Positions 11,355 through 61,489 of a stretch of DNA of 64,000 nt are shown piece after piece. The first letter of the stretch is position 1. Each line of letters opens with the position of its first letter. The DNA lies in IMG/VR virus record IMGVR_UViG_3300034073_005389, positions 297,491 through 361,490 of that record; one strand, 5' to 3'. Below the pieces are notes generated by a model. That model was given only the letters and a program-made list of their open reading frames with translations. It was not told where the DNA came from and ran no database searches. Made by a program: the position numbers and the translations under genes.

Positions 11355-11361
11355 TTTGCTT

Positions 11362-45899: not shown

Positions 45900-45985
45900 T
45901 GGTGCCGCCAACAGGACTTGAACCTGTATGCTCAATGAGCAAAAGATTTTGAATCTTCCGTGTATGCCGATTCCACCATGGCGGC
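45900..45985 (-). tRNA. tRNA-Leu(CAA), CCA encoded
   Basis: GAAGA-TT-CAA-AA-TCTTT; body resembles Leu-TAA at 31398. Confidence 0.92.
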
Positions 45986-46166
45986 TTATTTAGGGTAAGT
46001 AACAACCTACCCTTCACTTCTAATGAATTAGGTTAACCGATGGGAAACCCTGTTCATAACAATAGGCAGTTTAGACACATGCCCAGGTGTATCTTACTAT
46101 AATCACCATGCTACCAAATGTCAACTCTCAAGTATTTTATAAATATATAGGCTGTCAATGGCAAGA

Positions 46167-46400
46167 TTAGATTTCCACCATTGCCAAACGCACATTGGTA
46201 AACGTATACGGAACACCATCCGGCGTCTTATCAGGAAGATAGGAAAGCAGCTTCCTAGCCGCTTCATCCCTATTAGGAGAAGTACGAATACACTCAAGCA
46301 TCAGTCGATACAAGGGTTCATCATTACCCAGCCAAAGACACACATTCCAAGCGTTGTAGTTCTTATGCCCGTTATACTTCTTAGACATTTGTGCCTCCAC
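46167..46400 (-). CDS. Conserved hypothetical phage protein
   Basis: YNG..NY..WNV.LW..NDE.LY, TPDG. Confidence 0.75.
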   Translation of the reverse strand: MEAQMSKKYNGHKNYNAWNVCLWLGNDEPLYRLMLECIRTSPNRDEAARKLLSYLPDKTPDGVPYTFTNVRLAMVEI

Positions 46401-46413
46401 TAGACTTGAGTAG

Positions 46414-46734
46414 TTAGACCCACATTCCTTCGTGGAAAGGAACTACATTTCCATCCTTTTTCCGAAAAAACCATTTGAACTTTCGCTGAAAAAGATCTCC
46501 ACGAGAACCAATAGCCTGATTGATTCTCCTCTTGGTGGTTACACCCCTATAGTTGTTTGTAAGCAACTGAACATCCCCGTTCTTATTCCAAGTCACCACT
46601 GGAGTATTATGGTAAAACAAACCAATGGCATCAGCGGTAATACGAGCAACCCTCGTTGCCTTCTTACCACGAACATTCTTGCTATTCTTGCCATTCAAGA
46701 ACTGTTCCGCCGAAACATAGCTACAAGGAATCAT
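46414..46734 (-). CDS. Hypothetical basic protein
   Basis: TTKRRIN motif. Confidence 0.65.
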   Translation of the reverse strand: MIPCSYVSAEQFLNGKNSKNVRGKKATRVARITADAIGLFYHNTPVVTWNKNGDVQLLTNNYRGVTTKRRINQAIGSRGDLFQRKFKWFFRKKDGNVVPFHEGMWV

Positions 46735-47087
46735 AAATACCTCTTCAACTATTAGAGTAATAGGTTACAATAACTGCTTGATATTCACCAGCAGTATTTA
46801 CCACAACTCCAAGTACCGCTCCCATTCCTCCAGGAAAAGAACTTCTCTCATAAGCAATAACATGCTTACGACCATGCATATAAGCATCTTCAGCAGAAGA
46901 AAATAGTTCTGGCAAAACCACAGGTTCTCTAGGAAACGGATTATGAAAACTATAAAAGGGAAGCCCATTAGAATAATGACCCTTTGGATTTAGGTCTAAA
47001 ACCTGAATGTTCATTGTAAACCTCTTATAAGAAAACTTCTTGATTATAAGATTAGGTATTTCAGAATAAGCCCCTGGCTACTTCCAC

Positions 47088-47150
47088 TACAGAAGCGCGG
47101 AATCGAACCGCACGCAGTTTCTAGTTTCGTGCACAAAACTATACTTCTGC
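47088..47150 (-). ncRNA. Reduced tRNA-like RNA (acceptor + T arm + one hairpin)
   Basis: GCAGAAG/CTTCTGT, TGCGG-TTCGATT-CCGCG, TAGTTTTG-TGCA-CGAAACTA. Confidence 0.5.
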
Positions 47151-49067
47151 TTATTCAGATAAGTTAGCTACTCTTACCTTGAAATACCTAATCTTATAAA
47201 CAAAAATATTAGGCAGTTTATACACATGCCCAGGTGTCAACATGATTGACTCCTTCATTCCAGAAACTATTTTACCACTTATACAAACACATAACAAAAA
47301 CAATACCACCCGAAACAAACCAAGAGCCAACCATAACCAAAAACCCAGTTTGTGCCGACATACTAACCTCTATAGTTATGTGATTTGTTGAATACAAAAA
47401 GGCAGTTTATACACATACCCAGGTGTATAAACTACGCTCAGTCTTCGATCCCGCCTTTGCGGAAGGCTTGGAAGACTTTACCAATGAAATAAGCGGGGAT
47501 GCAGATGAGCTTGGGGGGATTATGCGCCTCGGGTCCGGCGAGAACCAAGATTTCGTATTCGTCAGTCTCCGTGTTGTATCCAACAAGAACGTCATCGTTC
47601 AGAACGAGTTTGTTTTTCATGTGCTATCCTTTCAGAGTGAACTTTGAACCGCCATGTTTAGAGCAACAGAACAATCCATTCAGGAGTAACTTTGCACTAG
47701 ACACTTTGCCGCATTACGAATGATCCTCATCACAGCCTCCTTGTAGAATCACACACATTTGTGTATTATAATAAACCAACAAGCCGAGAGACTAAATAAA
47801 AATATGTCTCTCTTTCTTGCTGCAACAAGCAAACGATTATAGCTTATCTACTTGCAGGTAAATAAACCTTATCGTTTCTTTATAATCACTTGTTGGCTTA
47901 TTGTAATACACAAGGCAGTTTATACACTTGCCTAGGTGTTTGGGTTATTTGGTAAAAATAAGTGGGGCATTTGGTAAAAATAGGATTTGCACCTATTTCT
48001 CCCTATCCAGGGCGAGTTAGCTATACTCCTTTACCACTATCCCCGGTCCTATTAGATTGATAGGTAATCTCACTAATAGGTATTAGGTAGTTTAGACACT
48101 TGCCTAGGTGTGTATGGCTATTCTCTGAAAGGCTCCCAGGTTACTATCCTCGGTCCTATTAGATTGACTAAGAGGTAATAAAAATGGCAACCATCCAAAC
48201 ATCTTTATCCACGGTTGCCATCACCGGATAAAGAAATAGCAACCATCTCAACATACTTTACCCACGGTTGCCATCACCGAGTAAAGCTGGAACGGTTTCA
48301 GGTAAATCCGCCAACCAAAACTATTAGGCAGTTTATCCACTTGCCCAGGTGTATTCCTCACGGCAAGAAATACCTTCCATCCACCGCATCAACCTTATCC
48401 AGCATATCCAGAATCTTGTTCTTCTCCTCGCCTTCCGACAATCCTCGAACCACCAACATCAGATTGTCCCAGGCATCCTGATCAATGCCGTATTCATCAT
48501 CCAAAAGAGACTCAATGAAGTTGAACATTGTGCTTACCTCCAATCCAACCCAACCTTGTCCCCTACCTACAATCTCCCAAGTTTACCGATGGGAACCCCC
48601 ACTTATTGCCAACAAAGCCGAAACCTTGTTGGCAATCCTGTCAATCCTCTACCCGCTCCAAATAACTCTCCTCCTCATTAGAGGTTTTTTTGTAACCCGT
48701 AGCCACCACAATCTCTCCCGAACTGTCCTCCGAGAATACCGCATCAGGACAAACTTGCAACACCAGTTGCACCATTTCCGCAAAAGTGATCTTCATCACC
48801 ACCCAACCTTGTCAGGAGATACCACCAAACAAAAATACGGATTCCCAGGTTTCATCAATCGCAACTTGTTTCCCAGCTTTCCCATAAAACAATACACGCC
48901 AGCATAACCAGAAACACTTGCATACACCAAATCACCAATCCGCAAGTTCATTATGCCTCCTGTTTTATCTCCAACCAACCGCTCCCCCCACCTCTAATCA
49001 CCCAAGTTGACCGATGGGAGCCGTTTGCACTTACCAGGAAGCCCATTACAGGCTTCCCAGTAAATAA

Positions 49068-49394
49068 TCACTTTTGAAGCGCCTTCTTTTCCATATTCTC
49101 CGTGGCAACTTCCACCAGTTGCCGAACATACTTATACATCATCACTCTGGCTTTATTCAAATGATTTCCCGTCAACTTCTTACCACTCATTAGCCATTTG
49201 GCATAATAAGTGCCAAGCCTGGCATCAGGTCCATTGAAGCCTTTGCCATTCGTGTGCAATGTGGTATTGCTGGTTTGCTCATCCATGGTTTGACGAGCAA
49301 AAATAGCCAATACCGCCCTCTCCACCGCATAATCATTGCAAAGCAACAAATAACGAATGTAATCCGGACTATTCTTTTCCATCTTTTCCTCCAA
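49068..49394 (-). CDS. Conserved hypothetical phage protein
   Basis: RQT.DEQ...T.H.NG.GF...DA, KY..QL. Confidence 0.75.
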   Translation of the reverse strand: MEEKMEKNSPDYIRYLLLCNDYAVERAVLAIFARQTMDEQTSNTTLHTNGKGFNGPDARLGTYYAKWLMSGKKLTGNHLNKARVMMYKYVRQLVEVATENMEKKALQK

Positions 49395-49413
49395 AAAAAG
49401 ATTTTCAAGAACT

Positions 49414-49459
49414 TGGACGGAGGGAAAGGAATCGAACCTTTCCTACAACCATTCTCCGT
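49414..49459 (-). ncRNA. tRNA-minihelix-like element ending in CCA
   Basis: CGGAG-AATGGTTGTA-GGAAAGG-TTCGATT-CCTTTCC-CTCCG-T-CCA, intergenic. Confidence 0.5.
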
Positions 49460-49468
49460 ATTCTCTAA

Positions 49469-49801
49469 CTACTTGCGCGAAATACCACCATTCTGCCCAC
49501 GACTCGCCACAAACTTATTGCTCCCAGCAAGATAATCAGCAATCCGCTTGCTCAATCGACCATAATCCTCATACCGATTGCTAATCTTAGCAAACACCTG
49601 CCCAATCAGCAATGGCTTCACCACCTTTGCGTTATTGTTCTCATCAAAAATACTATTCAAAGCATTCTCAATCAGAATATCCTCCGAAAGATTGACATTC
49701 TCCCATTCCACCAAATCCCCCATAAACTTATTCAGCGTAGCCTCATGATCAATCGCACCCGCGTCATTACGAATAACATAGGAAACAAAATCAATCTTCA
49801 T
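49469..49801 (-). CDS. Winged-helix-like protein (AT-rich copy)
   Basis: SYVIRNDAGAIDHEATL.KFM.DL...IADYL...RGQNGG. Confidence 0.65.
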   Translation of the reverse strand: MKIDFVSYVIRNDAGAIDHEATLNKFMGDLVEWENVNLSEDILIENALNSIFDENNNAKVVKPLLIGQVFAKISNRYEDYGRLSKRIADYLAGSNKFVASRGQNGGISRK

Positions 49802-49869
49802 AATCTTTTTTTCCTTTCAGCAACCAACCATTCCCCCCACCTCTAATCACTCAGGTTGACCGATGGGCT

Positions 49870-50300
49870 AACCCATACATACTTATCTGCCTATTTACCC
49901 ATTCACACATACATACATTTTTTCTGCCCGCTTACGCACACCCGTATACCCACCAACCATAAACATACTCTCCCATTCATACACACCCCTACTTACACTC
50001 CCCCAATAACCTATAAACTATAATAAATACATTCCACCCAAACTAACTACCCAATATCTCAATACCTACACCCCCACACACATCTATATGCAAAATTTAT
50101 TCTACCTATACCTTATACAATACCACTATTCCTTATTTCCATAACTTACATTTCTCCCGCCCCCATTCTTTATTTCCCTAAATCTGCACCCCATTTCTTT
50201 CTTATTTCTACTTATTTATAAAATAGATTATGTAGTTTAGTGTATATGTGTATTGATGTGTCTATGTTTGTGTGCAGTATAATAAATAAAAAAAGTTTGT
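49870..50300. other. Non-coding strand-skewed boundary segment
   Basis: About 350 nt nearly G-free (C/A/T) on +, flipping to C-poor G/T-rich at about 50225; no ORFs. Confidence 0.7.
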
Positions 50301-50451
50301 TTTTGGCTAGGGCAAAAACCATTGTGTGCAGTTGTTTGAATCTATGCCTAAATGTGTTTTGCGCCCTAGCCAAAAAGCATTTTTTTTAGGGCTAGGGCTT
50401 ATGCCACACCCAATTGCCAACCGAATGCATTTATCCAAAAACACAAACACA

Positions 50452-50557
50452 AAAAAAAAAGCCAATGGCGGGATTTCCGCCATTGGCTTTCACACACGCA
50501 AAAAAAGACAAAAAAAAAGACAAAAAAAAAGCCCCAGCGCATTGGCGCTGGGGCTTT
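50452..50557 (-). terminator. Two tandem intrinsic terminators closing the GC-rich cassette region
   Basis: GCCAATGGCGG..CCGCCATTGGC and GCCCCAGCGC..GCGCTGGGGC, each preceded on + by long A runs. Confidence 0.8.
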
Positions 50558-50577
50558 GGGAGACGGTCAGTCAGGTT

Positions 50578-50925
50578 TCACCGAGCGATGCGCTCGACTC
50601 CGCCATTCTGACCACGCTGGGCGTGGAATCGCGTCTTGTCTCCCAAGTAATCCGCGATCTTCTTAGAGAATTCCCCGAACTGAGTGAACGAAACACCCTT
50701 TCCGAGAAGGTACTGGAACGCTTCGCCCACCACCAGGGGCTTGGGCATGCGTTTGTTATCGTGACGGTCAAAGACCGAGTTGACGGCTTCGCGGATGAGT
50801 TCGAACTCATCCGCCGAAGCGGACTCGAAAGCGATGAGGTCTTGCATGAACTTGTGGAGCGTTTGCTCGTGATCGATGGAACCATCATCCGAGCGAACCA
50901 CGTAGCTAGCGAGATTGATCTCCAT
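50578..50925 (-). CDS. Winged-helix-like protein (GC-rich copy)
   Basis: SYVVRSDDGSIDHEQTL.KFM.DL...IADYL...RGQNGG; GGAGG RBS. Confidence 0.7.
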   Translation of the reverse strand: MEINLASYVVRSDDGSIDHEQTLHKFMQDLIAFESASADEFELIREAVNSVFDRHDNKRMPKPLVVGEAFQYLLGKGVSFTQFGEFSKKIADYLGDKTRFHAQRGQNGGVERIAR

Positions 50926-51222
50926 GACTGTATCCTCCGAAGGGCGTTGCGGCGTGATTGCCTGCCCTCAATATTGGTTCTGCAGGTTGACCGATGGGTG
51001 CAACCGGGACAAAAAAACCTTTACTCAGGGGCATGTTGACCGATGGGTACAATCCATCTAAAAAACCAAAACCCCCGTTGAATAGCAGAGGTTGACCGAT
51101 GGGCGCTTTGACGCGCAGGTACATTGTAGATTAGAGGTTGACCGATGGGAACCCGATTGCACTTGGCAAAAAAAAATCCCAGGTGCCTAAGCACCTGGGA
51201 TAAGATAAGACTCACTTTAGTA

Positions 51223-51396: not shown

Positions 51397-51518
51397 AGAG
51401 CCTCCTATCAGGAATGACCCTGACACAGTAGTATTGCCTGGTTGACCGATGGGTGCGATCCATTAAAACTTGCTCAGGTACAGATGTACCTGAGCAAGTT
51501 AGGCTAAGCTACTACCTG

Positions 51519-52079
51519 TCAGCCGTGAGAGAAGCTGACCTTGGTGGGTCGGGTTGCCATCAGCTTGAAGTCGCTGGTGAACGTACGCTCCTTCATCACA
51601 GGTCCAGAACGCTTACCCATCACCCTGGCGATTGCCTCGTCACGGTCCACTTCCATCGTGATGTGATTAGTGGAGCCGTCTTTGTTGGTGATCTTGGAGT
51701 CAATCACCCCTCGACAACCTGGCGGTCCAGCATCTAGCTTGCGATCCACCCACCTGGACGCTTCCCCACTCATGTAGAAACCCATCTCCTCCAACACTCC
51801 ACCCTTCGCATCGTAGATGCAGGCGTTGATGGGCTTCTGCACCTTCTCACGCTGGCGTGTAGCCTTGGCTTCCTGCTTCTTCTCAGGAACCCTGAGAAGG
51901 TCTTGCAAGACCGCCTCTTGCACCAGCTTGAGCGCTGGCGTCGGATACAGCTCTCCCTTCTCCAGGCGAGCCAGAATCGAGACAGCCTCGGGAATCCCCG
52001 AAAGGAACTCCCTTTGAGCCTGCAAGAAAGCGGCAGCGGAAACCTTACCAGCGGACTGACGCAGGAACTTCTTGTGCAT
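51519..52079 (-). CDS. Cassette hypothetical protein
   Basis: GGAGG RBS, start MHKKF. Confidence 0.7.
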   Translation of the reverse strand: MHKKFLRQSAGKVSAAAFLQAQREFLSGIPEAVSILARLEKGELYPTPALKLVQEAVLQDLLRVPEKKQEAKATRQREKVQKPINACIYDAKGGVLEEMGFYMSGEASRWVDRKLDAGPPGCRGVIDSKITNKDGSTNHITMEVDRDEAIARVMGKRSGPVMKERTFTSDFKLMATRPTKVSFSHG

Positions 52080-52189
52080 AGGAACCTCCAAACAAAGCCG
52101 TGATTGGCTCACCTATGTTTGTGCAAGTTGACCGATGGGTTCAAGCCACTGAAAACGCTCTTGAGACCATGTGGTCTCAAGAGCCTAGA

Positions 52190-52399
52190 CTAGAAGCTCA
52201 AAGGCGATCCATCCTCGTGTTCAGACTCCTCCGGCAACATGTCAATGAATGGGGCTGCCGTCTCCCAATCATCCTCACAGGCACCTCCCCTGAGGTTGAG
52301 CGTGTGAATACGCTCAAAATCAGGAATATAGCTGTCCATCTCATCTTCCAACATGGGGACGGATCGAGGAACGTATTGCTTTCCCATAACTACCTCCAT
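52190..52399 (-). CDS. Cassette acidic hypothetical protein
   Basis: Between motif 52432 and 3' hairpin. Confidence 0.55.
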   Translation of the reverse strand: MEVVMGKQYVPRSVPMLEDEMDSYIPDFERIHTLNLRGGACEDDWETAAPFIDMLPEESEHEDGSPLSF

Positions 52400-52528
52400 G
52401 AACCATGATTGGTTCACAATAGGTTTAGCAAGTTGACCGATGGGCTACCTGGATTGCACTCAACAAAAAAAAACGCCCTAGTACTCGTGTGTGAGTACTA
52501 GAGCGTTTAGGTGTGTGAGACTGTTTAG

Positions 52529-53110
52529 TTACACGCCGAGAGCAGCAAGCCGCTCATCGATGTTATTGATGCGTTCTTGTTCCCACGCTTCCGCACCAGG
52601 ATCATCTTGGTTGTGAGCGTGTAGCAGTGCTTCCACTGCCACTCGACGCTGAGCAATCAAGTTGTCAATCTCTCGCTGCCTGGGATTGGGCATACCTTTG
52701 ACGTAGCCCTGCAAGGTAGCTTGAGCGGTTGGTGCTGGAGACTTGCCGTATCGCTCTTGTTGGATCAAGTACCTGGCTCGTTGCCTGGCACGATCCAACT
52801 GCAAGCTGTACAGCTCACCAGTGTATGCGCCCGTGAACTTCTCAATGGCTCTGATGATTTCTTTCTTTGTCTCCGCTTCGGACTTTTCCTTGTTTGCCAG
52901 ATTGCACTCATGGATGAACGTTTTAGCGTCCTCCAAGGTTGCAACCTTGGTCGGCATGGGCGGAGGCGTTTGAGCAGGCTTGACAGGCTTGCTTACCACC
53001 TTTCGCTCCTCGGGAATGGTCCGGATTTGGATTGTCTGACGCTTCTCTTGCAACTTGGCAAGAGACGCAGCATACAACGCAATCATTTCGCGGAGATCGA
53101 CTTTGTTCAT
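52529..53110 (-). CDS. Cassette hypothetical protein
   Basis: GGAG RBS, start MNKVD. Confidence 0.7.
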   Translation of the reverse strand: MNKVDLREMIALYAASLAKLQEKRQTIQIRTIPEERKVVSKPVKPAQTPPPMPTKVATLEDAKTFIHECNLANKEKSEAETKKEIIRAIEKFTGAYTGELYSLQLDRARQRARYLIQQERYGKSPAPTAQATLQGYVKGMPNPRQREIDNLIAQRRVAVEALLHAHNQDDPGAEAWEQERINNIDERLAALGV

Positions 53111-53231
53111 GTTTACTCCAATCCACTGACAAGTGCCAGTAGACACCTATGGTTGTGCTGGTTGACCGATGGGTGTGAGCCGCTGAAACAAAATGCTCAG
53201 GTCTATATAGACCTGAGCACCTGTCAACTCG

Positions 53232-53480
53232 TCACCTCTCGTCAGTGAGAACCATCACGAACTCCTTGTCAAGCAAGATCTTGAGCGCATCATCCTGTTC
53301 GGATGGATGCAGCTGTACTTCCAAGGGGAAGAATCGGCTCCAATCATAGGCTCGAACCCGGTATTCTTCCGGCTCACCTGCACAGTCCCAAGTAGGACCT
53401 TTGGCTGGAACATAGTCCAGCTCCAGGTCTACGGTAATGGTTTTGTGGTTGCGTACGATCTGCATCTGAATGTCTTTCAT
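53232..53480 (-). CDS. Cassette hypothetical protein
   Basis: AGGAGG RBS. Confidence 0.65.
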   Translation of the reverse strand: MKDIQMQIVRNHKTITVDLELDYVPAKGPTWDCAGEPEEYRVRAYDWSRFFPLEVQLHPSEQDDALKILLDKEFVMVLTDER

Positions 53481-53574
53481 AAAACCTCCTGGGTCAATGG
53501 TGGTGTAGTAAGTTGACCGATGGGTGCATACAACTGAAAACGCTCATGGAACCATATGGATCCATGAGCATAAA

Positions 53575-53820
53575 CTAGATGATGTTGAGCCTGCTCCAAA
53601 ACCTTTGGCTTTCTTTCCCTACCTCACACAGAGGCAAAGGAGCGACTTCATTTTGAGCAAGCATGCGCCTGACTTTACGCCCTTCCTGGTCCTCCTTGAA
53701 ACCAGGAAGGCAAATAAAGTCTCTGGAAACGGCTTCAGAGAATGCGTCCTCCAACGCAATCTCGAACTGTTTCTCAGACTCGAACTTATAGCCACTGATA
53801 GTGTAAATGCACTGTGCCAT
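53575..53820 (-). CDS. Cassette hypothetical protein
   Basis: GGAGG RBS, start MAQCI. Confidence 0.6.
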   Translation of the reverse strand: MAQCIYTISGYKFESEKQFEIALEDAFSEAVSRDFICLPGFKEDQEGRKVRRMLAQNEVAPLPLCEVGKESQRFWSRLNII

Positions 53821-53939
53821 AAATAGCACCTCCGTAACCTACTTACTGCTTGTTGACCGATGGGTTACCTGGATTGAACTTAACAAAAAAACCCAGGCTT
53901 ACATGGACTCATTAGAATCCACATAAACCTGGGCTCTCA

Positions 53940-54167
53940 CTACCTCACCAACACGAAGGTGTTGGGTTGACCCAGCCAGCTGTTGAGCTGGGTCGCCATC
54001 TGCCTTGCATCTTGGTATGTGTACTCTTGTACACGAGTTATGCCGTTGCGAGTGTCTCGCAACTTCCAACCTTTCTCCTCGAACAATGCCAGGAAACAAT
54101 CCTGGCAAATCGGCTTGCAGTTGAACTTGCATGTGCTTGCGCTTTTATCACACATCTGGCAGTTCAT
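53940..54167 (-). CDS. Cassette Zn-finger-like protein
   Basis: CQMC...CQDC. Confidence 0.6.
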   Translation of the reverse strand: MNCQMCDKSASTCKFNCKPICQDCFLALFEEKGWKLRDTRNGITRVQEYTYQDARQMATQLNSWLGQPNTFVLVR

Positions 54168-54280
54168 AATGCCTTTCCATCTACTCTGTTTGGTGAGTAG
54201 ACACCTATACCTATCTATGTTGACCGATGGGTGCACACAACTGAAACGTTGTGCAGGAGTTGCCTCCTGCACAACCTTTC

Positions 54281-54739
54281 TCAGTAGTCGTCGCGACCCG
54301 ACCACCGATCCTGTTCCATGTACTGCATGTACCTCTCCTCCTCGTTCCAGTGCTCGTAGGGTCGCATCATACGAGCGTTGTAGTCTCTGAGTACCGACTC
54401 CAGCGCCTCCCGCTTGGCGTGGAGCCTGTTGATGTAGGCGTCTCGCTGCGCCTCCATCTCTTCGTTCACCTGCTCTCGTAGGTGATCGCGCTCCTCCTTG
54501 GTCAAGTCGCGACCAAGAGCAGACTCACGACTACAGAACTCCTCATACGCACGCTCTTGGAAGAGGTCATCCTCCATCTCACGTGCGTGGTCGTCCCAGT
54601 GGTAACGCTCGATCTGAGCATTGGTATCATTCCACTGAGAGGCGAGACCCTTGATGATCTCCTCCTTTGCCTGAGCGATCAGGCGCTCGTGGTCCGTAGC
54701 GTTTTCGGGGCACTCGATGTTGATCACGTATCCACGCAT
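54281..54739 (-). CDS. Cassette acidic protein, paralog of 45425-45865
   Basis: RPYEHWNEEERYMQYME. Confidence 0.7.
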   Translation of the reverse strand: MRGYVINIECPENATDHERLIAQAKEEIIKGLASQWNDTNAQIERYHWDDHAREMEDDLFQERAYEEFCSRESALGRDLTKEERDHLREQVNEEMEAQRDAYINRLHAKREALESVLRDYNARMMRPYEHWNEEERYMQYMEQDRWSGRDDY

Positions 54740-54867
54740 ATCAGCCTCCAGACAAGCCTTGATTGGCTCACTTATGTTTTTGCATGTTGACCGATGGGTA
54801 CAGCCCACTGAAAAAAAACCGTGTCAGGAAATTCCTGACACGGCTAGGTATGTACGCTAGTTGGCGA

Positions 54868-55074
54868 TCACTTGACCTTGATCACCAGACCGTTTTGCAC
54901 GGTCACCTCTGCGTACCAGGTATGGGGCTGCGGGTAGTGCGGTCCACCTACCGCAGTAGTCCCATTCTCTGGCGGGTTGCCGAGACCAGGTGCGTAAATA
55001 TGCACCGGTTTCCCGGCAGCCACATCATCCTTGAGTTGCTTCTTGGTCTTGTAGTTCTTGGTGGTGTAGAACAC
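54868..55074 (-). CDS. Cassette conserved small phage protein
   Basis: KTKKQLK...GPHYPQPHTWYA. Confidence 0.75.
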   Translation of the reverse strand: MFYTTKNYKTKKQLKDDVAAGKPVHIYAPGLGNPPENGTTAVGGPHYPQPHTWYAEVTVQNGLVIKVK

Positions 55075-55202
55075 TGAACCCTCCTAGACAAAGCCGTGAT
55101 TGGCTCAATGGTAGTTGTGCAGGTTGACCGATGGGTACGGACCACTGAAACATGCTTGGAAGCATTCGCTTCCAAGCACGTTTTGTTGAGAGTGTTGTTA
55201 GA

Positions 55203-56827
55203 TTACTTCTTGTTGCTCTCCTTGTAGAGTACGATCAGCTGTTCGTATACCTGGCTGTGATGGTACAATCCTTCCTGCCATTCCAGCAGGAGTTTTTTCA
55301 CCCTTTCCTGCTGAATCTCGTTGAGAGCGTTGTACAGGTACAGACCTGGCAGTTCCCCATCCCACAGCTGGGTGAGAAGCCTCTCCTCTTCCATGACCAG
55401 AGCCTTGATCTTCTGGTCGTACGCCAACTGCTTGCGCAGCTTGGCGATACGGTTTTTGATCTGGTGTACGGTGTTGCGGTTGCGGTTGCTCATGTGAGAC
55501 TCCGAGAAAGCCGTGTGTGGAGTTGTACGGCTCACATACAGTTATGCGGGTTGACCGATGGGTTAACTTGTTTGCATTTAACAAAAAAAACCCTTGGCTT
55601 GCTTGCGCAAACCAAGGGCTTTATCACTGCAACGAAAGCAAGAACATCTCTCCTTTCTGAGTGAAAGACTTGAGAATCATACCGCCAGCCATGGAGTAAA
55701 CTCCAAGGTCTGTGCCAGGATGAACTTTGCTGTTGAACTTTGCCACACGATCTCCATTGGGAGCCATGTAGGCAATGGTCAGCCCTTGCTCCAGGGCTTT
55801 CTCGAACTCAACGTGGCTAATCTGCATAGCTACCTCCTCGTATTGAAGTATGTATATTGACCGATGGGTGCAAACAACTAAAACTGCAAGCACCTGATTG
55901 CTCAGGTGCTTGCAAGAGTCAGTACATGCTGATGCTGTTCTCAATCTCTTGGTCTTGGCTCAACCGAGCCGCCTCCTTCCAGCGGCGCTGAACCATCCAA
56001 CGGGTGACCAGCCCGTTGTACTTGAATGCTTTTTCGCACGCTTCTACGGTTTTCCGCCATGCCTCTGCCGCCTTTTGGTTACCGGTGGCGGCAGCGAACT
56101 GCCCCTCCACCGAAGCCAGGATGGAGAGAGAGATGAAAGGCGTGCTGGATCGCATGATCTTCATGTTTATCTCCTAGAGCCATTGGTTGATTGGCTCACT
56201 TGTAGTTGTGCAGGTTGACCGATGGGTACATACCACTAAAACTGCAAGTACCTGATTGCTCAGGTACTTGCGTGTTTCATGAGTTCACGTATTCCTCCTC
56301 TGCCTTATTGATGATGCGGTGCGCCAAGTTGTCAATCTCATCCATCTCTGCCTCGGTGGCTTGGTCGAGCGCACCCGCAGACACAAGCTCCATCACCTTC
56401 AGATGAAGGTTGCCGATGTTATGGCAACCATTCACGTAGTTGTATTCTCCTCGGATCTTTCCGAAATGGTTCTTGTTACAAGCAAACCCGTTGTTACGGA
56501 GATGCTTGATGACCAGGGGGATCAGCCTACCCAGTTGCATAACTTGCCTTTCCGAGCCATAGTGGCTCACTTATGTTTTTGGAAGTTGACCGATGGGTAC
56601 AACCAACTGAAACATGCTCAGGATTGCTCCTAAGCATGCTTGTCTCAGAGAGATAGGCGAGATACCACCCTGCACCCCTGACGAACCAACGAGGCAAACA
56701 TGCGCTCCCAGTTGTCCTCAGAGACGAGCATGGTTGCCTCGTCTCCTTCTTTGGTAATGTACCACAGGCGTACATTACATTTTTCTTTGATCCCAGGGCT
56801 AACTGCCCTGGGTTTTAGCTTACTCAC
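55203..56827 (-). other. Five single-gene cassettes with small hypothetical proteins
   Basis: 55203-55493, 55624-55827, 55919-56164, 56277-56540, 56645-56827; each between a motif copy and a 3' hairpin. Confidence 0.6.
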
Positions 56828-57039
56828 GTCTACTTATCCTTTCTTGCGTGAACAATAGTCCAACGCAAAGAAAAAGAACCCCATAGAACATGAAGTCAAA
56901 TAACTCCATAACTATGTTTGTACATGTTGACCGATGGGTGCGAACCATTGAAACAAGAACCCAGGATTGCTGTTGCAATCCTGGGTTCTTATCTGCTCAC
57001 CCACCGGAATCCGTTAGGACTCAACAGTGGGTGAGTGTG

Positions 57040-57900
57040 TCAACCGAGCGCCAGCTTCGCCAGGGCGATTGCGCCCTCCCGACTGCGGGCGCCGCCGATG
57101 AACCGTGCGTTGTGGCAGAATACGGAATCATGAACTCCAGTCACTGCCGCCAGCTGTTCGTTTCGTAGCCCCGCCCATGCCTCGGGGAGCGGTCGGCGTT
57201 GCCCGAAGCTCCCCATGCTGGGCGGAACGCACTGGACCAGCCAGTCGTCCGCTTGGGGGAACACGAGGAAGAGCGCGTGGGTGCTCTCCTCCACCACCGT
57301 CTGCATGACCGGCATGAACCGGTCCAGAACGATGATCTTCCCCTCGATTGCGTTGGAGATGGCGTGGCGAGCGCCCTCCAACGCGAGCATCCGACCCTGC
57401 GCAGAGGCGATCACCCTGCGCAGGTGTGCCTCTGCAAACTCGACGGCGCGGGCGAATGCGTCGTCGAAGTTTTGCGCCTCGTGCCAGCAGGGGTTGAACC
57501 CGCTGACCACATCAGAGAAGGTGTGGTGATCCACACCTTCAGTAATGCTGCGGGTGCCGTACCCGCAGTCGAGGGCGTCAACCGCCCAGATGAGGTCGCT
57601 TTCGACCTCCCCCTCCACGCCGGGGGCGATGGAAGCACCAAAGTGCTTCCACACGAGACCGGCGCTGCTGTAGGGCACCCCATTGGGGCGCACGCCAGCG
57701 CCCCCCTTCTGGTGGTGGTCGAATCGTAGCGTGGTGGGGTCATAGACCCCTCCCACGTCCACAACAACCATCCCCATCTCGATCACCTTGGGATCGCGGG
57801 TCCGGATAACCGGACCCTCGAACCCCGCCATGCGCAAAATAGCGCAGGCGAGAACGTCGTCGGCGTGGAAGGGACCATTGTGAGTGACAATACTGCTCAT
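57040..57900 (-). CDS. MYG1/UPF0160-family DHH exonuclease
   Basis: THNGPFHADD, RTRD, DVGGVYD, FDHHQ, SSAGLVW, FCH. Confidence 0.9.
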   Translation of the reverse strand: MSSIVTHNGPFHADDVLACAILRMAGFEGPVIRTRDPKVIEMGMVVVDVGGVYDPTTLRFDHHQKGGAGVRPNGVPYSSAGLVWKHFGASIAPGVEGEVESDLIWAVDALDCGYGTRSITEGVDHHTFSDVVSGFNPCWHEAQNFDDAFARAVEFAEAHLRRVIASAQGRMLALEGARHAISNAIEGKIIVLDRFMPVMQTVVEESTHALFLVFPQADDWLVQCVPPSMGSFGQRRPLPEAWAGLRNEQLAAVTGVHDSVFCHNARFIGGARSREGAIALAKLALG

Positions 57901-58032
57901 GTGAGCCTCCTAGAAAGCCGTGTGTGAAGTTGTACGGCTCACATACAGTTGTGCAAGTTGACCGATGGGTACAAGCCATGTAGAAAATCGGTGAGTCAGA
58001 ATCTCGAAAGACTCAATGACTCACCGAGTGTG

Positions 58033-58506
58033 TCAACCGTAGAGCGTTCGGAGGGTCGCGCAAACGCGCGTCGCCTCCGATTGTTGGAACCGCTCCACTT
58101 TCTGGAGCAGTTCGATTGACTCTTCCCGGTCCATGCCGGGAAGCTGACGGAGTGCCAGCAACAGCAGTTTGCTGCTGGCGGTGGGTGCGCCGTCGAAGCG
58201 CACCACCTCACCGTTGAGGGTGAGGGAGAAGGGCTCATCGCCCTCCTCGCCCTCGCCCTCGCCCTCATTGCCGAGTGCCTCACCGAGTGACCATGCGGTC
58301 ACTCGGTGGGAGGAGGTGCCTGAGTGCCCGTCAAGGCGCACCGACACCCCCTCCTCGTGGGTGAGGGTAAGAACTGCGGGGAGGAGTAACGTACTCCTCC
58401 CGATGTGGTGCCTGAACGAGCCGAGGACAATCGCCCCCAGCTCGTTCAGCACCACCTGGCGGGGTTCAAACCCCGCCATGGCTGCGAAACCAGTTGCAAT
58501 AATCAT
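58033..58506 (-). CDS. Cassette hypothetical protein
   Basis: AGGAGG RBS, start MIIAT. Confidence 0.6.
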   Translation of the reverse strand: MIIATGFAAMAGFEPRQVVLNELGAIVLGSFRHHIGRSTLLLPAVLTLTHEEGVSVRLDGHSGTSSHRVTAWSLGEALGNEGEGEGEEGDEPFSLTLNGEVVRFDGAPTASSKLLLLALRQLPGMDREESIELLQKVERFQQSEATRVCATLRTLYG

Positions 58507-58680
58507 TGCAACCTCCTTGCAGAGTCTATCCACTACCCGTAATAGATCAGCATGACCTGTCATCAGGTAACAGCTTCGACTCTCACATACAGTTGTGCAA
58601 GTTGACCGATGGGTACAAGCCATGTAGAATCAGTGAGCCGGAATCCCGAAGGACTCAACAGCTCACTGATTCCGGGACAC

Positions 58681-58911
58681 CTACAGATCGTAGACGCCCC
58701 GTTGTCCCACGATTGACCAAGAGGAGTACTCCTCTTGGTCAATCATGGTTGTGTGTCCGACGATGAGGTTTTCAAACCTCTCGTCGGTCACCAGTTTGTA
58801 GGCGTCGCCACGTAGCAACGCCTTTGCCGCCCGCATGGCGAGCGGCAGAGGGAGACCCGTCTTTCGACGGATCTCCCTCCCCAAAACCACACGTCTTCGT
58901 TTCAGTGTCAT
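58681..58911 (-). CDS. Cassette basic hypothetical protein
   Basis: GGAGG RBS, start MTLKRRR. Confidence 0.6.
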   Translation of the reverse strand: MTLKRRRVVLGREIRRKTGLPLPLAMRAAKALLRGDAYKLVTDERFENLIVGHTTMIDQEEYSSWSIVGQRGVYDL

Positions 58912-59059
58912 TTGACACCTCCACTTACTTGTTTGCAAGTTGACCGATGGGTGCGTGCCAGTTAGATTGACCAGCCGGAATCCCGAAGGACTCAACAGCT
59001 GGTCAATACTACCCCCTCACTGAAGCTCAACCCTCTCAGGGAACTTCAGTGAGGGACCT

Positions 59060-59407
59060 TCACACCTCACACCAGGGAATAGTCTCCCTGGTGAAATCCT
59101 CCTCCACCTCATGCCAGCCGAACTGGTCGGCATGAGGTGAAACCCTCCCCACGTAGCGGACCAAACGAAATGGTCCGCTGTGGGGGTAGTCCGTATCGTA
59201 CGCGGCGGACTCTTCGTCCACCTCGTACGCCACCACCCACGCCATTCCGGCGTGGAAGCCACGCGCCCACGGGGGCGCGTCGTCGCCCCGAAGAGCCCAG
59301 AGCCCTTCGGGGTGGGTATAGAGGAGGTCACGGACCTCCTCCATGGTGGGGATGGGGAGGTCCGTCTCCGGAACCTCCCCATCCCAATCAGGAAACATCA
59401 CCCTCAT
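59060..59407 (-). CDS. Cassette acidic hypothetical protein
   Basis: AGGAGG RBS, start MRVMF. Confidence 0.65.
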   Translation of the reverse strand: MRVMFPDWDGEVPETDLPIPTMEEVRDLLYTHPEGLWALRGDDAPPWARGFHAGMAWVVAYEVDEESAAYDTDYPHSGPFRLVRYVGRVSPHADQFGWHEVEEDFTRETIPWCEV

Positions 59408-59575
59408 GGTGACCTCCTTGTAGAGTCTATCCACTACCCGCAACAGATCACCACGATCTATTATCAGGCAGTAGCTTCGACCCTCACATACAGTTATGCA
59501 AGTTGACCGATGGGTGCACGCCAGTTAGATTGACCAGCCGGAATCCCGAAGGACTCAACAGCTGGTCAATCTCAC

Positions 59576-59797
59576 TCACTGCGGGAGGAAGCTCCGAAGA
59601 GCCTCCATCGCCACAGCGAGGGTTGCGCCCCCGCCCGTGCGGTCCCACGCCCCTCGGGCGTGGTTCTCCGCTGCTGGCACGTAGGTGACGTGCCAGCAGC
59701 GCCCGCAGGCGCACCCATCCGGGGAAGGTGGCGTGATCTCCACCTTCCCCGGACCCCAGGCGGCACAAGCCGCCTGTACCAGAGATTCGAAGTCCAT
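59576..59797 (-). CDS. Cassette hypothetical protein
   Basis: AGGAGG RBS, start MDFES. Confidence 0.6.
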   Translation of the reverse strand: MDFESLVQAACAAWGPGKVEITPPSPDGCACGRCWHVTYVPAAENHARGAWDRTGGGATLAVAMEALRSFLPQ

Positions 59798-59972
59798 GTG
59801 GACCTCCTCAGAGAGCGTATCCACTACCCGCAATAGATCACCACGATCTATCATCAGATAGAGGTTTCCACCCTCACATGCAGTTATGCAGGTTGACCGA
59901 TGGGTGCGAGCAGTGTAGAAACTCGGCAAGCCGGAATCCCTTACGGGACTCAACAGCTTGCCGAGGGGGGAG

Positions 59973-60185
59973 TCAATGAAGCTTGAAAAGCTTCATTGCC
60001 TCCCCCGCTGTCATTTTTTGCGGGAAGTCGTATTCATATACGACCCCCGCTACGTCGTACGTGAGTCCGAGGTACACAAGTACCTCGGACTCTGGGGGGA
60101 GGACTGCCAGCCTCTGGCAGTCCTCCCCGTGCAAATATGGATAGCCCCATAAATCGGGGCTCATCCACTCGTAGAATTCCTCCAT
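59973..60185 (-). CDS. Cassette protein, paralog of 61286-61489
   Basis: M.EFYE...LP..SEV.VY.G..Y...G.VY....P..MTA.EA.K.F. Confidence 0.7.
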   Translation of the reverse strand: MEEFYEWMSPDLWGYPYLHGEDCQRLAVLPPESEVLVYLGLTYDVAGVVYEYDFPQKMTAGEAMKLFKLH

Positions 60186-60447
60186 GGAATTCTCCTTAGA
60201 GAGCGTATCCACTACCCGCAATAGATCACCATAATCCATTATCAGGTAACAGCTTCAACTCTCACATACAGTTACGCAGGTTGACCGATGGGTGCAAGCC
60301 ATGTATATTAACAAAAAAATTGAAATACTCATATACTCTTGTGTGAAAAGAAATAAGTAACTTATACAAGTTGACCGATGGGTGCAAGCCGTGTAGAGTA
60401 ACGAGCCGGAATCCTTTGCAGGACTCAACGACTCGTCACTCGCATTG

Positions 60448-61110
60448 TTACTTGCGATTTTTCTTGCCACCAAAGTGGCTCAGAAAACTCGCAATCGCAC
60501 CCGCCGATGCGGGCTCACCTCGCACCGGAGGCGGAGGGGGAGGAGGAGGGGGAGGAGGAGGAGGGGGAGGGTATTCTGAATAATACCTCTCCTTATAATA
60601 CTCCTCCTTCAATCCCCCTGCACTCATGACAAAGCGCGAATACGCGATTTTGTCATGAAAGTTCTCCCAAGAGACCGACCAATCAGCCTCAATTGGGAGA
60701 ACCAGCCACTCTTTGCTGCGGTTTCCATACCGGGACGTGCTCAAATCCCGGTGAAGTTTACACCCCCGGAACACCGGGTCCCCCAGGGTGTAGCGTTTCC
60801 CCCCTTGGGGGATTGCCCTGACCGTGACGCATTGCGCCACGATCAGATCGTCGGCAGCCTTTTCAGCTGCCTTGCGTGCGGCTTCTTCAGCCGCTTTGGC
60901 TGCTTGCGCAGCCTCCCGCGCAGCTGCCTGCGCCGCCCGCTCCGCCCGCTCCTCCGCCAGACGAGCCTCTACCTGGGCGGCAAATGCCGGGTCCAGGTAG
61001 CTCCTTCCCGCCGCCCCGATAGGCGGCGGAGCCGCTTGCCCCCACGGATCGTAGGAGCCGCGCTGCGTGCCGGGCTCCTCCCCGTTGAGATAACGGTTCC
61101 AGTCACCCAT
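60448..61110 (-). CDS. Cassette protein with Ala/Glu/Lys helix and poly-Pro tract
   Basis: GGAGG RBS; AAEEAARKAAEK; run of about 14 Pro. Confidence 0.7.
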   Translation of the reverse strand: MGDWNRYLNGEEPGTQRGSYDPWGQAAPPPIGAAGRSYLDPAFAAQVEARLAEERAERAAQAAAREAAQAAKAAEEAARKAAEKAADDLIVAQCVTVRAIPQGGKRYTLGDPVFRGCKLHRDLSTSRYGNRSKEWLVLPIEADWSVSWENFHDKIAYSRFVMSAGGLKEEYYKERYYSEYPPPPPPPPPPPPPPPVRGEPASAGAIASFLSHFGGKKNRK

Positions 61111-61285
61111 AGGTGACCTCCTTGTAGAGTCTATCCACTACCCGCAATAGATCACCATGATCTATTATCAGGTAGAGGCTTCCACTCTCACATGCAGTTA
61201 TGCAGGTTGACCGATGGGTGCGAGCAGTGTAGAAACTCGACAAGCCGGAATCCCTTGCGAGACTCAACGGCTTGCCGAGCGACGG

Positions 61286-61489
61286 TCAGAGGAAGGCTTT
61301 TTGAGCCTCCTCTGCCGTCATTACTTCCGGGGCGCCGTGTTGGTACACGTACCCCGACATTTCGTATTCAATTCCGAAGTACACGCGTACTTCGGAATCG
61401 ATCGGGAGGGCGCGGAGGCGGACTTTATCCGCCTCCGCGAGCCAGGCGCGACCTACGTCGCCCCCCCCGCACTCGTAGAATTCCTGCAT
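61286..61489 (-). CDS. Cassette protein, paralog of 59973-60185
   Basis: See paralog alignment; AAGGAG RBS. Confidence 0.7.
   Translation of the reverse strand: MQEFYECGGGDVGRAWLAEADKVRLRALPIDSEVRVYFGIEYEMSGYVYQHGAPEVMTAEEAQKAFL

What the first reader, a model, noticed from the sequence alone, without database searches (positions are those of the whole stretch)
46064..48352. Six copies of a 27-nt H-type pseudoknot-like element, some directly after genes
Seen on minus: ACAC-CT-(G/A)GGCA-(T/A)-GTGT-(A/C)TAAAC-TGCCT. ACAC/GTGT forms stem 1 and the loop GGCA pairs with the downstream TGCC. Most variants keep pairing (GGGCA, AGGCA, GGGTA); one copy has a mismatch in each stem. Copies directly follow the stops at 48358 and 47438. 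Confined to 2.3 kb. Inference: a 3' exonuclease block, a termination/antitermination signal or a protein-binding site.
Basis: partly seen in the sequence, partly recalled or inferred. Interest (0 to 1): 0.6.

Follow-up and report, generated by a model that had tools for sequence, protein, structure and literature searches.

The report
Widespread phage RNA pseudoknot, six copies
The six 27-base repeats are real copies of a tiny knotted RNA fold found between genes in several hundred phage sequences (hosts of the named phages include staphylococci, lactobacilli, cyanobacteria and marine roseobacters); it is in no RNA-family catalogue I could search, and its job is still unknown.

Summary
Observation confirmed. 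Six minus-strand copies of ACACCTRGGYANGTGKNTAAACTRCCT lie at window 46064-48352. None is expected by chance, and there are no others in the 361-kb phage record.

I found 298 non-redundant related copies in 240 stretches fetched from IMG/VR contigs, plus copies in named phages. Both stems covary heavily. The two-base loop CU, the loop UAAAC and the A11-U23 pair are invariant or nearly so. G-U pairs far outnumber A-C, so the fold belongs to the sense-strand RNA.

The element matches no Rfam 15 family, and its sequence appears in no searchable paper.

It sits between genes:
- at least 5 nt after the upstream stop codon;
- mostly 20-33 nt before the next start codon, or 3-7 nt before a tRNA;
- sometimes directly after a promoter -10 box or after a terminator;
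- followed by a G-poor leader.

Related phages share only these copies, and the cassettes between them are exchanged.

Function is inferred, not shown. My best reading is a fast-folding, mechanically tough RNA knot that marks cistron boundaries and blocks RNA decay or structural interference. Rivals are a translation enhancer, an RNA-polymerase-modifying element, a protein-binding site, a ligand sensor and a ribozyme.

The parts
48326..48352 (-). Pseudoknot copy 1 (ACACCTGGGCAAGTGGATAAACTGCCT). It starts 5 nt after the stop of the 61-aa ORF 48543-48358. It is followed by two tandem hairpin repeats.
   Evidence: One search shows an alternative hairpin with the end of the upstream ORF.
48085..48111 (-). 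Pseudoknot copy 2 (stem-2 C-A mismatch, TACCT). It is followed by a tRNA-like, terminator-like element at 48039-47954.
47913..47939 (-). Pseudoknot copy 3 (matches the commonest ACAC-type sequence exactly). It is followed by a hairpin with 25-nt arms and then the ORF 47620-47438.
   Evidence: (inverted repeat I3)
47400..47426 (-). Pseudoknot copy 4 (GGGTA, a U-G wobble in stem 2). It starts 11 nt after the stop at 47440-47438 and lies 38 nt before a 29-codon hydrophobic ORF whose ATG is at 47361.
47402..47435 (-). Alternative 13-bp hairpin plus U-run that competes with copy 4. The flank GTAGTTTAT pairs with ATAAACTGC.
   Evidence: terminator-like site; -20.3 kcal/mol, z -3.8. This is not a general feature of the family.
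47211..47237 (-). Pseudoknot copy 5. It begins 3 nt after an AAGGAG-N6-ATG (ATG at 47243-47241). It is followed by a hairpin with 34-nt arms that encloses a T-arm-like sequence.
   Evidence: (inverted repeat I1)
46064..46090 (-). Pseudoknot copy 6. It is followed by a motif-B copy (46044-46031) and tRNA-Leu(caa) at 45985-45900.
46096..46124 (-). Near-consensus sigma-70-type promoter TTGACA-17-TATAGT that ends 5 nt before copy 6. The predicted start falls on the first bases of the pseudoknot.
   Evidence: 11 of 12 matches. This is a consensus match only.

Best explanation
The six repeats are members of a large, uncatalogued family of 27-nt H-type RNA pseudoknots carried on the sense strand of phage transcripts. 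Its parts are stem 1 (4 bp), loop CU, stem 2 (5 bp), one junction base, and the loop NUAAAC. That much is shown. The working model is inferred. The invariant loops would lock the two stacked stems into a compact, fast-folding knot that needs no partner encoded nearby. Placed at cistron boundaries, the knot would act as a barrier. It would stop exonucleases that arrive from an RNase P or endonuclease cut on either side. It would also keep flanking sequence from pairing with the G-poor leader and ribosome-binding site that follow. Each gene, tRNA or small-RNA cassette would then be a separately stable, context-independent unit. In this jumbo phage, six such units are stacked in 2.3 kb. They sit near the upstream end of the long leftward gene array, about 2 kb inside the point where GC content steps from about 55% down to about 33%. 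The repeated knots also serve as recombination points where cassettes are exchanged.
For: Structure: with stem 1 left free in the search, 126 of 129 copies pair at all 3 core positions, using 16 different cores. With stem 2 left free, 104 of 131 pair at all 5 positions, using 18 different strands. On an 80-sequence alignment, 97% of cells are paired against 72% in shuffles and 27-44% in slid controls, and all 9 pairs show double changes. That alignment was pre-filtered for pairing. G-U cells number 127 and A-C cells 19. Named phages show compensatory stem-2 changes.

Boundary role: the distance from stop codon to knot has a sharp floor at 5 nt (61 cases at 5 nt, 26 at 6 nt, 5 below 5 nt). The distance from knot to start codon is mostly 20-33 nt. 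Flanks never extend stem 1. The base after the knot is A in 63% of copies, and the next 13 or so nt are 6-14% G. A tRNA follows the knot in 14 of 298 copies, 7 of them at 3-7 nt, and never precedes it. A promoter -10 box lies 5 nt upstream of copy 6 and of several other copies. Terminators lie just upstream in phiEF-1.1, D6E and 19 of 271 copies. The knot precedes genes expected to be highly expressed: scaffold and major capsid genes in S. aureus, Lactobacillus and Geobacillus phages, and the SSB gene in cyanophage S-EIVl. No protein family is shared by all the fetched stretches. Joints between related phages fall at the edges of the knots.
Against: There are no RNA data. No RNA run holds the window, so no 5' or 3' ends, half-lives or protection have been seen. 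A 4+5 bp knot may be too weak to stop RNase R or RNase J. A plain hairpin would serve as a barrier, so the invariant loops may instead mark a binding site for a host factor or a ligand. The evidence on direction is mixed. The tRNA asymmetry and the closeness to stop codons favour a 3' role, whereas promoter and terminator adjacency favour a 5' role. Copies within one phage share the same stem 1, which could hint at a specific recognition partner. Copies 1 and 4 have strong competing hairpins, and copy 5 overlaps a possible small ORF.
Confidence: 0.4

Rival explanations
1. Translation element. The knot docks on or positions the 30S subunit, or acts as a standby or insulator site, for the start codon that lies a fixed distance downstream. 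This would matter most for leaders without a Shine-Dalgarno sequence.
For: Within one phage the knot-to-AUG spacing is very tight: 20-23 nt in 7 of the 8 copies of L214 (33 nt in the eighth) and 32-34 nt in 5 of the 6 copies of L061 (41 nt in the sixth). The leader is G-poor and CA-rich. The knot precedes genes expected to be highly expressed, such as scaffold, capsid and SSB genes.
Against: 14 of 298 copies directly precede tRNAs. In the window, copies 1 and 2 precede non-coding RNA. 61 of 292 copies have no start codon within 80 nt. The tight spacing may only reflect duplicated cassettes.
Confidence: 0.17
2. Transcription element. The nascent knot binds RNA polymerase and changes pausing or termination, working like the put RNAs of phage HK022.
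For: The target would be universal, which fits a host range spanning Firmicutes, cyanobacteria and alphaproteobacteria. Copy 6 sits right after a promoter. Window copies 1-3 are each followed by terminator-like hairpins. Copy 4 can switch between the knot and a terminator hairpin.
Against: Many copies lie after terminators rather than before them. Up to 8 copies occur in one operon. The knot/terminator alternative is seen only in copy 4. At 27 nt the element is much smaller than put RNA (about 65 nt, from memory).
Confidence: 0.12
3. Binding site for a conserved host or phage protein, such as an RNase (RNase P, E, Y or J), an RNA chaperone or a regulator. That protein would cut or regulate at the site.
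For: Nine positions (C5, U6, A11, U18-C22, U23) are invariant or nearly so across distant phages. Copies within one phage share the same stem 1. There is a fixed 3-7 nt gap to tRNA 5' ends, where RNase P cuts. U is invariant at position 6 and A is common after stem 2.
Against: No protein is shared by the flanks of the 240 stretches. The Firmicutes copies are not followed by an ACCA-like tail. No binding data exist.
Confidence: 0.15
4. Minimal riboswitch or ion sensor. A ligand would slot in at the stem junction, as in preQ1-I or fluoride riboswitches, whose layout it resembles.
For: The architecture is similar: a 4-5 bp stem, an 8-nt loop whose middle pairs downstream, and an A-rich AUAAAC-type linker (from memory of published structures). 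G is almost excluded at junction position 12 (2 of 298). Copy 4 has a knot-versus-terminator alternative.
Against: There is no match to any Rfam riboswitch model at E<=10. There is no conserved expression platform. The downstream genes are unrelated to each other and include tRNAs. Unpaired positions are G-poor in general.
Confidence: 0.05
5. Very small self-cleaving ribozyme, or the remnant of one. It would be related to the hairpin-pseudoknot-AAA module of pistol ribozymes or to the HDV-like 'theta' ribozymes found next to phage tRNAs.
For: It has the same module order as the 5' part of pistol (from memory). The setting is phage-borne and tRNA-adjacent, as for theta ribozymes (PMC10879173, abstract only). 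Loop nucleotides are invariant.
Against: The P2 and P3 stems and the G-U cleavage site of pistol are missing, as is the P3/L3/P1.1 core of HDV-like ribozymes. There are no Rfam hits. 27 nt is below the size of any known self-cleaver.
Confidence: 0.04
6. DNA-level promoter. TAAACT would be the -10 box, and one subgroup has TTGACA 3 nt upstream. This is how BPROM annotated the site in Staphylococcus phage B236.
For: T18, A19 and T23 are invariant or nearly so and fit TAnnnT. 25 copies carry TTGACA 3 nt upstream, which gives an 18-nt spacer to TATAAA. The sites are annotated as 'promoter' in phages B236, B166 and B122.
Against: Double-stranded promoters do not need two covarying helices, and G-T pairs on one strand only (127 against 19) point to RNA. 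Five of the six window copies lack any -35 box. The motif is nearly absent from bacterial genomes: the ACAC-type pattern gave 1 hit in 185,579 species genomes.
Confidence: 0.04

Closest known systems
Compact H-type pseudoknots with an A-rich loop 3, such as the luteovirus (BWYV) frameshift stimulators (recalled from memory)
   Same: About 27-28 nt long. Two short stacked stems, a 2-nt loop 1, one junction base and a 6-7 nt A-rich loop 3. The knot sits about 5-6 nt downstream of the codon in the ribosomal A site.
   Different: Here the upstream codon is a stop codon, not a slippery heptamer. There is no overlapping reading frame. The element is intergenic, and it also precedes tRNAs and follows promoters.
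preQ1-I (RF00522) and fluoride/crcB (RF01734) riboswitch cores
   Same: A short stem, a loop whose central bases pair with a downstream strand, and an AUAAAC-like linker after stem 1.
   Different: No Rfam match. There is no L2 cytosine pocket and no P3 insertion. There is no expression platform and no link to queuosine or fluoride genes.
Pistol ribozyme (5' hairpin-pseudoknot module) and HDV-like theta ribozymes next to phage tRNAs (PMC10879173)
   Same: Phage-borne. A hairpin loop forms a pseudoknot, followed by UUAAA. Some copies abut tRNA genes.
   Different: The remaining stems and the cleavage site are absent. Theta ribozymes are reported adjacent to viral tRNAs, whereas here the knot is always upstream of the tRNA.
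Exonuclease-resistant RNAs (xrRNA) of flaviviruses and plant viruses
   Same: The proposed logic is the same: a small knotted fold as a mechanical block to a processive RNase.
   Different: There is no sequence or fold homology. Those RNAs are larger ring-like folds that block eukaryotic Xrn1. The function here is untested.
PeSL promoter-terminator cassettes of T4-type phages (PMC2839356, PMC4122927)
   Same: A short, conserved regulatory repeat that flanks small, variable gene cassettes and serves as a recombination point.
   Different: A PeSL is a terminator stem-loop plus a sigma-70 promoter acting as DNA. This element is a covarying RNA pseudoknot.
T4 gene 32 leader pseudoknot; Rfam GP20-a/b motifs upstream of scaffold genes
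   Same: A 5'-UTR pseudoknot followed by an unstructured leader. Some copies lie upstream of GP20-type scaffold genes.
   Different: It is not tied to one gene family. cmscan finds no GP20-a/b match at the knot sites in phages 80, phiEF-1.1 or D6E.

Membership tests
H-type RNA pseudoknot (structural class) | A hairpin stem, plus pairing of its loop with a downstream strand, both kept by compensatory changes | tested here: met
   both helices covary and slid controls collapse
H-type RNA pseudoknot (structural class) | The structure belongs to the transcribed (sense) strand | tested here: met
   G-U cells 127 against A-C 19. Every window copy is on the strand of the flanking genes, and in the inspected homologues the next ORF or tRNA lies downstream on the same strand. 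No direct RNA data.
Any Rfam 15 family | Covariance-model match | tested here: not met
   Gathering scan of the window. E<=10 scan of 45950-48450. E<=1 scan of five named-phage loci. None hits the element.
preQ1-I riboswitch | Conserved ligand-pairing C in a multi-base L2, the Shine-Dalgarno sequence or a terminator inside the fold, and queuosine-related genes downstream | tested here: not met
   L2 is one variable base. There is no platform. The downstream genes are unrelated to one another.
Pistol / HDV-like (theta) ribozymes | Further stems (P2 and P3, or P3/L3/P1.1/P4) and a defined cleavage site | tested here: not met
   Nothing is conserved beyond the 27 nt. No Rfam hit. Self-cleavage itself is not testable here.
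Frameshift or read-through stimulator | A slippery heptamer or leaky stop 5-9 nt upstream, with a continuing or overlapping ORF | tested here: inconclusive
   The spacing fits (5-6 nt in 87 of 298 copies). However, the upstream codons I inspected show no slippery pattern, a new start codon follows, and many copies have no upstream ORF.
Sigma-70 promoter / PeSL cassette | -35 and -10 hexamers with a 16-18 bp spacer, acting as double-stranded DNA | tested here: not met
   Five of six window copies lack a -35 box. The 'spacer' covaries as two helices. A separate promoter lies upstream of copy 6.
T7-type phage-RNAP promoter | A single-subunit RNAP gene in the phage, and conservation without internal complementarity | tested here: inconclusive
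   PF00940 was not found in five carrier records, but the control genomes did not ring either. The element occurs in Staphylococcus siphoviruses, a group not known to carry such a polymerase (from memory; locus annotations). The internal covariation argues against this class.
Type III toxin-antitoxin RNA repeats (ToxI-like) | Head-to-tail repeats next to an endoribonuclease toxin gene | tested here: not met
   Copies are 172-1147 nt apart with genes and RNAs between them. Most of the fetched stretches hold a single copy (173 of 232), as do the four carrier records read in full.
Exonuclease-resistant RNA | Halts a processive exonuclease in vitro and in vivo | not testable with these tools
   Only positional evidence is available.

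The most novel reading that the evidence does not exclude
A 27-nt triple-helix-type pseudoknot is a universal, protein-independent 'punctuation mark' of phage transcripts. It would be the first bacterial-virus counterpart of exonuclease-resistant RNAs. It would halt host RNases (and possibly ribosomes) at cistron boundaries in hosts from Firmicutes to cyanobacteria. It would also be the portable joint at which phages swap gene cassettes.
Probability: 0.25. Interest if true: 0.9.

Novelty: new variant of a known kind. Interest (0 to 1): 0.8.

Why it matters
This would be one of the smallest strongly conserved RNA folds known, and one of the most widely spread among phages. The fold also occurs in about 88 Staphylococcus aureus phage records and in phages of Lactobacillus, Geobacillus, Moorella, Nostoc, Synechococcus and roseobacters.

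It sits in front of genes that phages probably need at high dosage (scaffold, capsid, SSB, tRNAs), so it probably bears on how a single operon yields unequal product amounts.

It can be tested directly in tractable systems such as S. aureus phages 80 and phiETA.

If it is an autonomous barrier or insulator, it would be a ready-made 27-nt part for synthetic operons. It would also be a new marker for annotating phage transcription units.

Tried and rejected
- Chance or assembly artefact: rejected.
- Host-derived element: the strict ACAC-type pattern hits only one 12-kb MAG contig among 185,579 species genomes.
- Megablast of the region against named phages: no match.
- Known RNA family: Rfam gathering and permissive scans were negative. 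This includes the GP20-a/b motifs that lie upstream of scaffold genes.
- Literature: six full-text searches by sequence fragment or by topic found no description. The supplements of the 10,006-candidate phage RNA survey (PMC10690425) are not held, so I cannot exclude that the motif is among its unnamed candidates.
- Partner protein encoded nearby: all-against-all clustering of 7,629 ORFs from 240 stretches gave no family present in more than 50 of them. The top families are a DNA polymerase A and other proteins specific to one cyanophage-like lineage.
- T7-type RNAP search (PF00940): uninformative, because the control genomes did not respond.
- Extension of stem 1 by the flanks, as a general riboswitch-like alternative: absent, and in fact depleted.
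- RNase J-specific barrier: hosts of the confirmed named phages all belong to groups that have RNase J (from memory), but the BLAST sampling is too biased to support this.
- RNA evidence: no RNA run holds the window. Read laying could only lay DNA contigs.
- Pfam and PHROGs scans of ten neighbouring ORFs: only a MYG1-type exonuclease domain.
Full report
**1. The observation**

On the minus strand, the pattern ACACCTRGGCANGTGTNTAAACTGCCT (up to 3 mismatches allowed) occurs six times. The copies lie at 48352-48326, 48111-48085, 47939-47913, 47426-47400, 47237-47211 and 46090-46064. One hundred dinucleotide-preserving shuffles gave no match.

The window is the last 64 kb of a 361,490-bp IMG/VR virus record. 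A degenerate search of the whole record finds only these six.

Copy 1 begins 5 nt after the TGA of ORF 48543-48358. Copy 4 begins 11 nt after the TGA of ORF 47620-47438.

The two mismatches are in two different copies: a stem-1 end mismatch in copy 1 and a stem-2 C-A mismatch in copy 2.

Logan contigs from run X2 (one contig spanning the whole stretch, no differences) and run X4 (three identical contigs) carry the same array. Both runs are subsurface metagenomes from one study. X2 may be the sample the window was assembled from, so this is not fully independent support.

**2. It is a family, and the pseudoknot is real**

The exact degenerate 27-mer occurs in 29 other IMG/VR contigs. I estimate about 0.003 chance hits for a pattern with this many fixed bases; that is my own arithmetic, not a tool result.

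I then left stem 1 free (pattern CTRGGCANNNNNNTAAACTGCCT). In that unbiased set:
- the three core stem-1 pairs are all formed in 126 of 129 non-redundant copies;
- they use 16 different core sequences, including ACAC/GTGT, CGTC/GACG, AGAC/GTCT, ACTG/CAGT, TGAG/CTCA and CGCC/GGCG.

Next I left stem 2 free (pattern CGTCCTNNNNNNGACGTTAAAC). All five stem-2 pairs form in 104 of 131 copies, using 18 different strands such as TGATA/TGTCA, GAGCA/TGCTC, GGACA/TGTCC, GGTCA/TGACC and AAACA/TGTTT.

On an 80-sequence alignment, the structure ((((..[[[[[.))))......]]]]] gives:
- 97% paired cells, against 72% in shuffles and 27-44% when the partners are slid;
- double-sided changes at all nine pairs;
- a covariation score of 0.685 against 0.234.

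This alignment was pre-filtered for pairing, so the two unbiased sets above carry the argument.

G-U cells outnumber A-C cells 127 to 19. The pairing is therefore on the sense strand, as expected for RNA.

The invariant or nearly invariant positions are C5 and U6 (loop 1), the A11-U23 pair, and U18 A19 A20 A21 C22 (loop 3). Positions 12 and 17 vary and almost never hold G.

A regex for the fold finds 329 copies in 2.0 Mb of fetched DNA (240 stretches; 298 copies after removing duplicates). It finds 1 copy in the same DNA read backwards.

**3. Where it occurs**

Named phages that carry it:
- Synechococcus phage S-EIVl: about 5 copies, one of them 21 nt before the SSB gene.
- Nostoc phage NMeng1: 4 nt before a tRNA.
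- Moorella phage MTATph1.
- Lactobacillus phage phiEF-1.1 and Geobacillus phage D6E: between an intrinsic terminator and the scaffold and major-capsid genes.
- About 88 Staphylococcus phage records, including 80, phiETA, phiMR11, 55, 29, 88, 92 and X2. The two loci I inspected (phages 80 and B236) place it between the minor-head gene and the scaffold and capsid genes.
- Other Lactobacillus, Anoxybacillus and Streptococcus pyogenes phages. These are BLAST matches in unannotated intergenic DNA whose fold I did not check individually.
- Roseophages SIO1 and Celeribacter P12053L.

Looser variants in a Pasteurella phage and in Rhizobium phages are uncertain.

The strict ACAC-type pattern hits one MAG contig among 185,579 species genomes. 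At least that type is therefore phage-borne rather than a host element.

The element matches no Rfam 15 family under either threshold. Its sequence appears in no searchable paper.

**4. Context rules (298 non-redundant copies)**

- The distance from an upstream stop codon to the knot has a sharp floor: 61 cases at 5 nt, 26 at 6 nt, 14 at 7 nt, and only 5 below 5 nt.
- The distance from the knot to the next start codon is mostly 20-33 nt.
- The base after the knot is A in 63% of copies. The following 13 or so bases are only 6-14% G.
- Flanking sequence never extends stem 1, and such extension is rarer than in mixed controls.
- Fourteen copies are followed by a tRNA, seven of them at 3-7 nt. No copy is preceded by a tRNA within 220 nt.
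- Terminator-like hairpins are commoner in the 80 nt upstream (19) than in the 80 nt downstream (4).
- -10-like hexamers peak 5 nt upstream of the knot.
- A fetched stretch holds one to eight copies. In the whole records searched, multiple copies cluster within one part of the record. Copies within one phage share the same stem 1.
- 153 copies have genes on both sides. 61 have a gene only upstream and 50 only downstream.

**5. The window's six copies**

The record is transcribed almost wholly leftward. It is a jumbo myovirus-like phage with a DnaE-type polymerase and a baseplate J protein.

Its right-hand 14 kb is 50-59% GC and the rest is about 33% GC. The knots lie about 2 kb inside the point where GC content drops.

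- Copy 6 is preceded by TTGACA-17-TATAGT, which ends 5 nt before the knot. The transcript would therefore start on the knot.
- Copies 1-3 and 5 are followed by structured non-coding stretches: tandem hairpins, two tRNA-like pieces, and hairpins with 25- and 34-nt arms.
- Copy 4 can instead form a 13-bp hairpin plus U-run (-20.3 kcal/mol, z -3.8).
- Copy 1 can pair with the end of the upstream ORF.
- Copy 5 starts 3 nt after an AAGGAG-N6-ATG.

In a second contig of run X2, and in the freshwater and marine runs X5 and X13, only the knots (or the cassettes they delimit) match the window. The joints fall at the edges of the knots: 46095 to 47213, 47240 to 47396, 48111 to 48319 and 47905 to 47211. 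The knots therefore bound exchangeable cassettes.

**6. How it most likely works**

Shown: a conserved sense-strand pseudoknot placed between expression units.

Inferred:
- The 5-nt floor after stop codons matches the reach of a ribosome whose A site holds the stop codon. This rests on general knowledge of ribosome footprints. It suggests that the knot must stay folded and that unwinding it is costly.
- The roughly 20-nt floor before start codons matches the footprint of an initiating 30S subunit.
- Together with the G-poor leader, the avoidance of stem extension and the lack of a shared neighbouring protein, this points to an autonomous, sturdy boundary element. It would act as a barrier to exonucleases and to structural cross-talk between units.
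- The tRNA asymmetry and the closeness to stop codons favour protection of the upstream RNA's 3' end after RNase P or endonuclease cuts.
- Copies at transcript starts and copies after terminators favour a 5' role. I therefore state the model without a direction, at about 0.4 confidence.

The rivals are listed with their tests in the rival explanations. They are a translation enhancer, an RNAP-modifying RNA, a protein site, a ligand sensor, a ribozyme and a DNA promoter.

**7. Comparison with known systems**

The fold resembles several known RNAs: luteovirus-type compact pseudoknots, the cores of preQ1-I and fluoride riboswitches, and the first module of pistol ribozymes. These resemblances are recalled from memory and are leads only.

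Every membership test that I could run failed: no Rfam hit, no ligand-pocket loop, no expression platform, no extra stems, no slippery site.

Its behaviour in genomes recalls the PeSL cassettes of T4-type phages (PMC2839356, PMC4122927). Those are DNA-level terminator-promoter units.

**8. Verdict**

The repeat is real and the structure is right (about 0.95 confidence). The family is large and, as far as I could check, undescribed. The function is open.

Noticed in passing
window 946-63963, minus strand (about 50 sites, e.g. 46031, 48580, 49005, 49854, 50985-51136 and densely through 51440-63963): A second, much larger repeat family: CCCATCGGTCAAC[CTA]-TGCACAACTATAAGTGAG. All copies are on the minus strand and lie in the last 63 kb or so of the record. 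Each sits about 30-60 nt before a ribosome-binding site and start codon, often just after a terminator-like GC hairpin plus T-run. It looks like a phage-specific promoter class. The ACTATAAGTGAG part recalls T7-type promoters. It is absent from four other phages that carry the pseudoknot.
   Followed up: partly
window about 49000-51000 (record about 346-348 kb): GC content steps from about 33% (347 kb of the record) to 50-59% in the terminal 14 kb. That terminal part still consists of small minus-strand ORFs with motif-B sites. IMG/VR labels the record 'provirus'. I did not resolve whether the high-GC end is the phage's early region, acquired DNA or an assembly join.
   Followed up: partly
window 45900-48600, compared with runs X2, X5 and X13: Related phages share the pseudoknot copies, but different sequence lies between them. 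Contig joints fall at the edges of the knots, so the knots act as cassette-shuffling points.
   Followed up: partly
window 47037-47206 and 47954-48039, minus strand: There are two tRNA-like fragments that ARAGORN does not call. One is a T-arm-like GGTTCGATTCC enclosed by a hairpin with 34-nt arms. The other is a T-arm-like hairpin plus T-run that gave a weak hit (E 0.16) to an unrelated sRNA model.
   Followed up: no
window 48190-48290, minus strand: A tandem repeat of about 53 nt. Each unit forms a GATGGCAACC...GGTTGCCAT hairpin followed by a T-rich run, so each unit looks like a terminator. The repeat lies between pseudoknot copies 1 and 2.
   Followed up: no
window 47241-47243 and 47361: Copy 5 begins 3 nt after a strong AAGGAG-N6-ATG that opens a 30-codon frame running through the knot. 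Copy 4 is followed by a 29-codon hydrophobic mini-ORF.
   Followed up: no
window 630-824, minus strand: Group I intron (Rfam RF00028, 52 bits, just above the gathering score).
   Followed up: no
window 3327-45985, minus strand: Eleven tRNA genes with repeated specificities: four Leu(taa), two Arg(tct), and Ile(tat), Leu(caa), Gln, Tyr and Gly. These fit an AT-rich phage supplying its own tRNAs for rare codons.
   Followed up: no
window 57040-57900, minus strand: A 286-aa ORF with a full-length MYG1/UPF0160 exonuclease-family domain (E 6e-76) lies in the high-GC end region.
   Followed up: no
G000 118554-123302 (locus L280); G005 10408-13071 (within locus L263): Intein and LAGLIDADG insertions occur in a large ORF of the window's phage and in the terminase of an unrelated carrier phage.
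   Followed up: no
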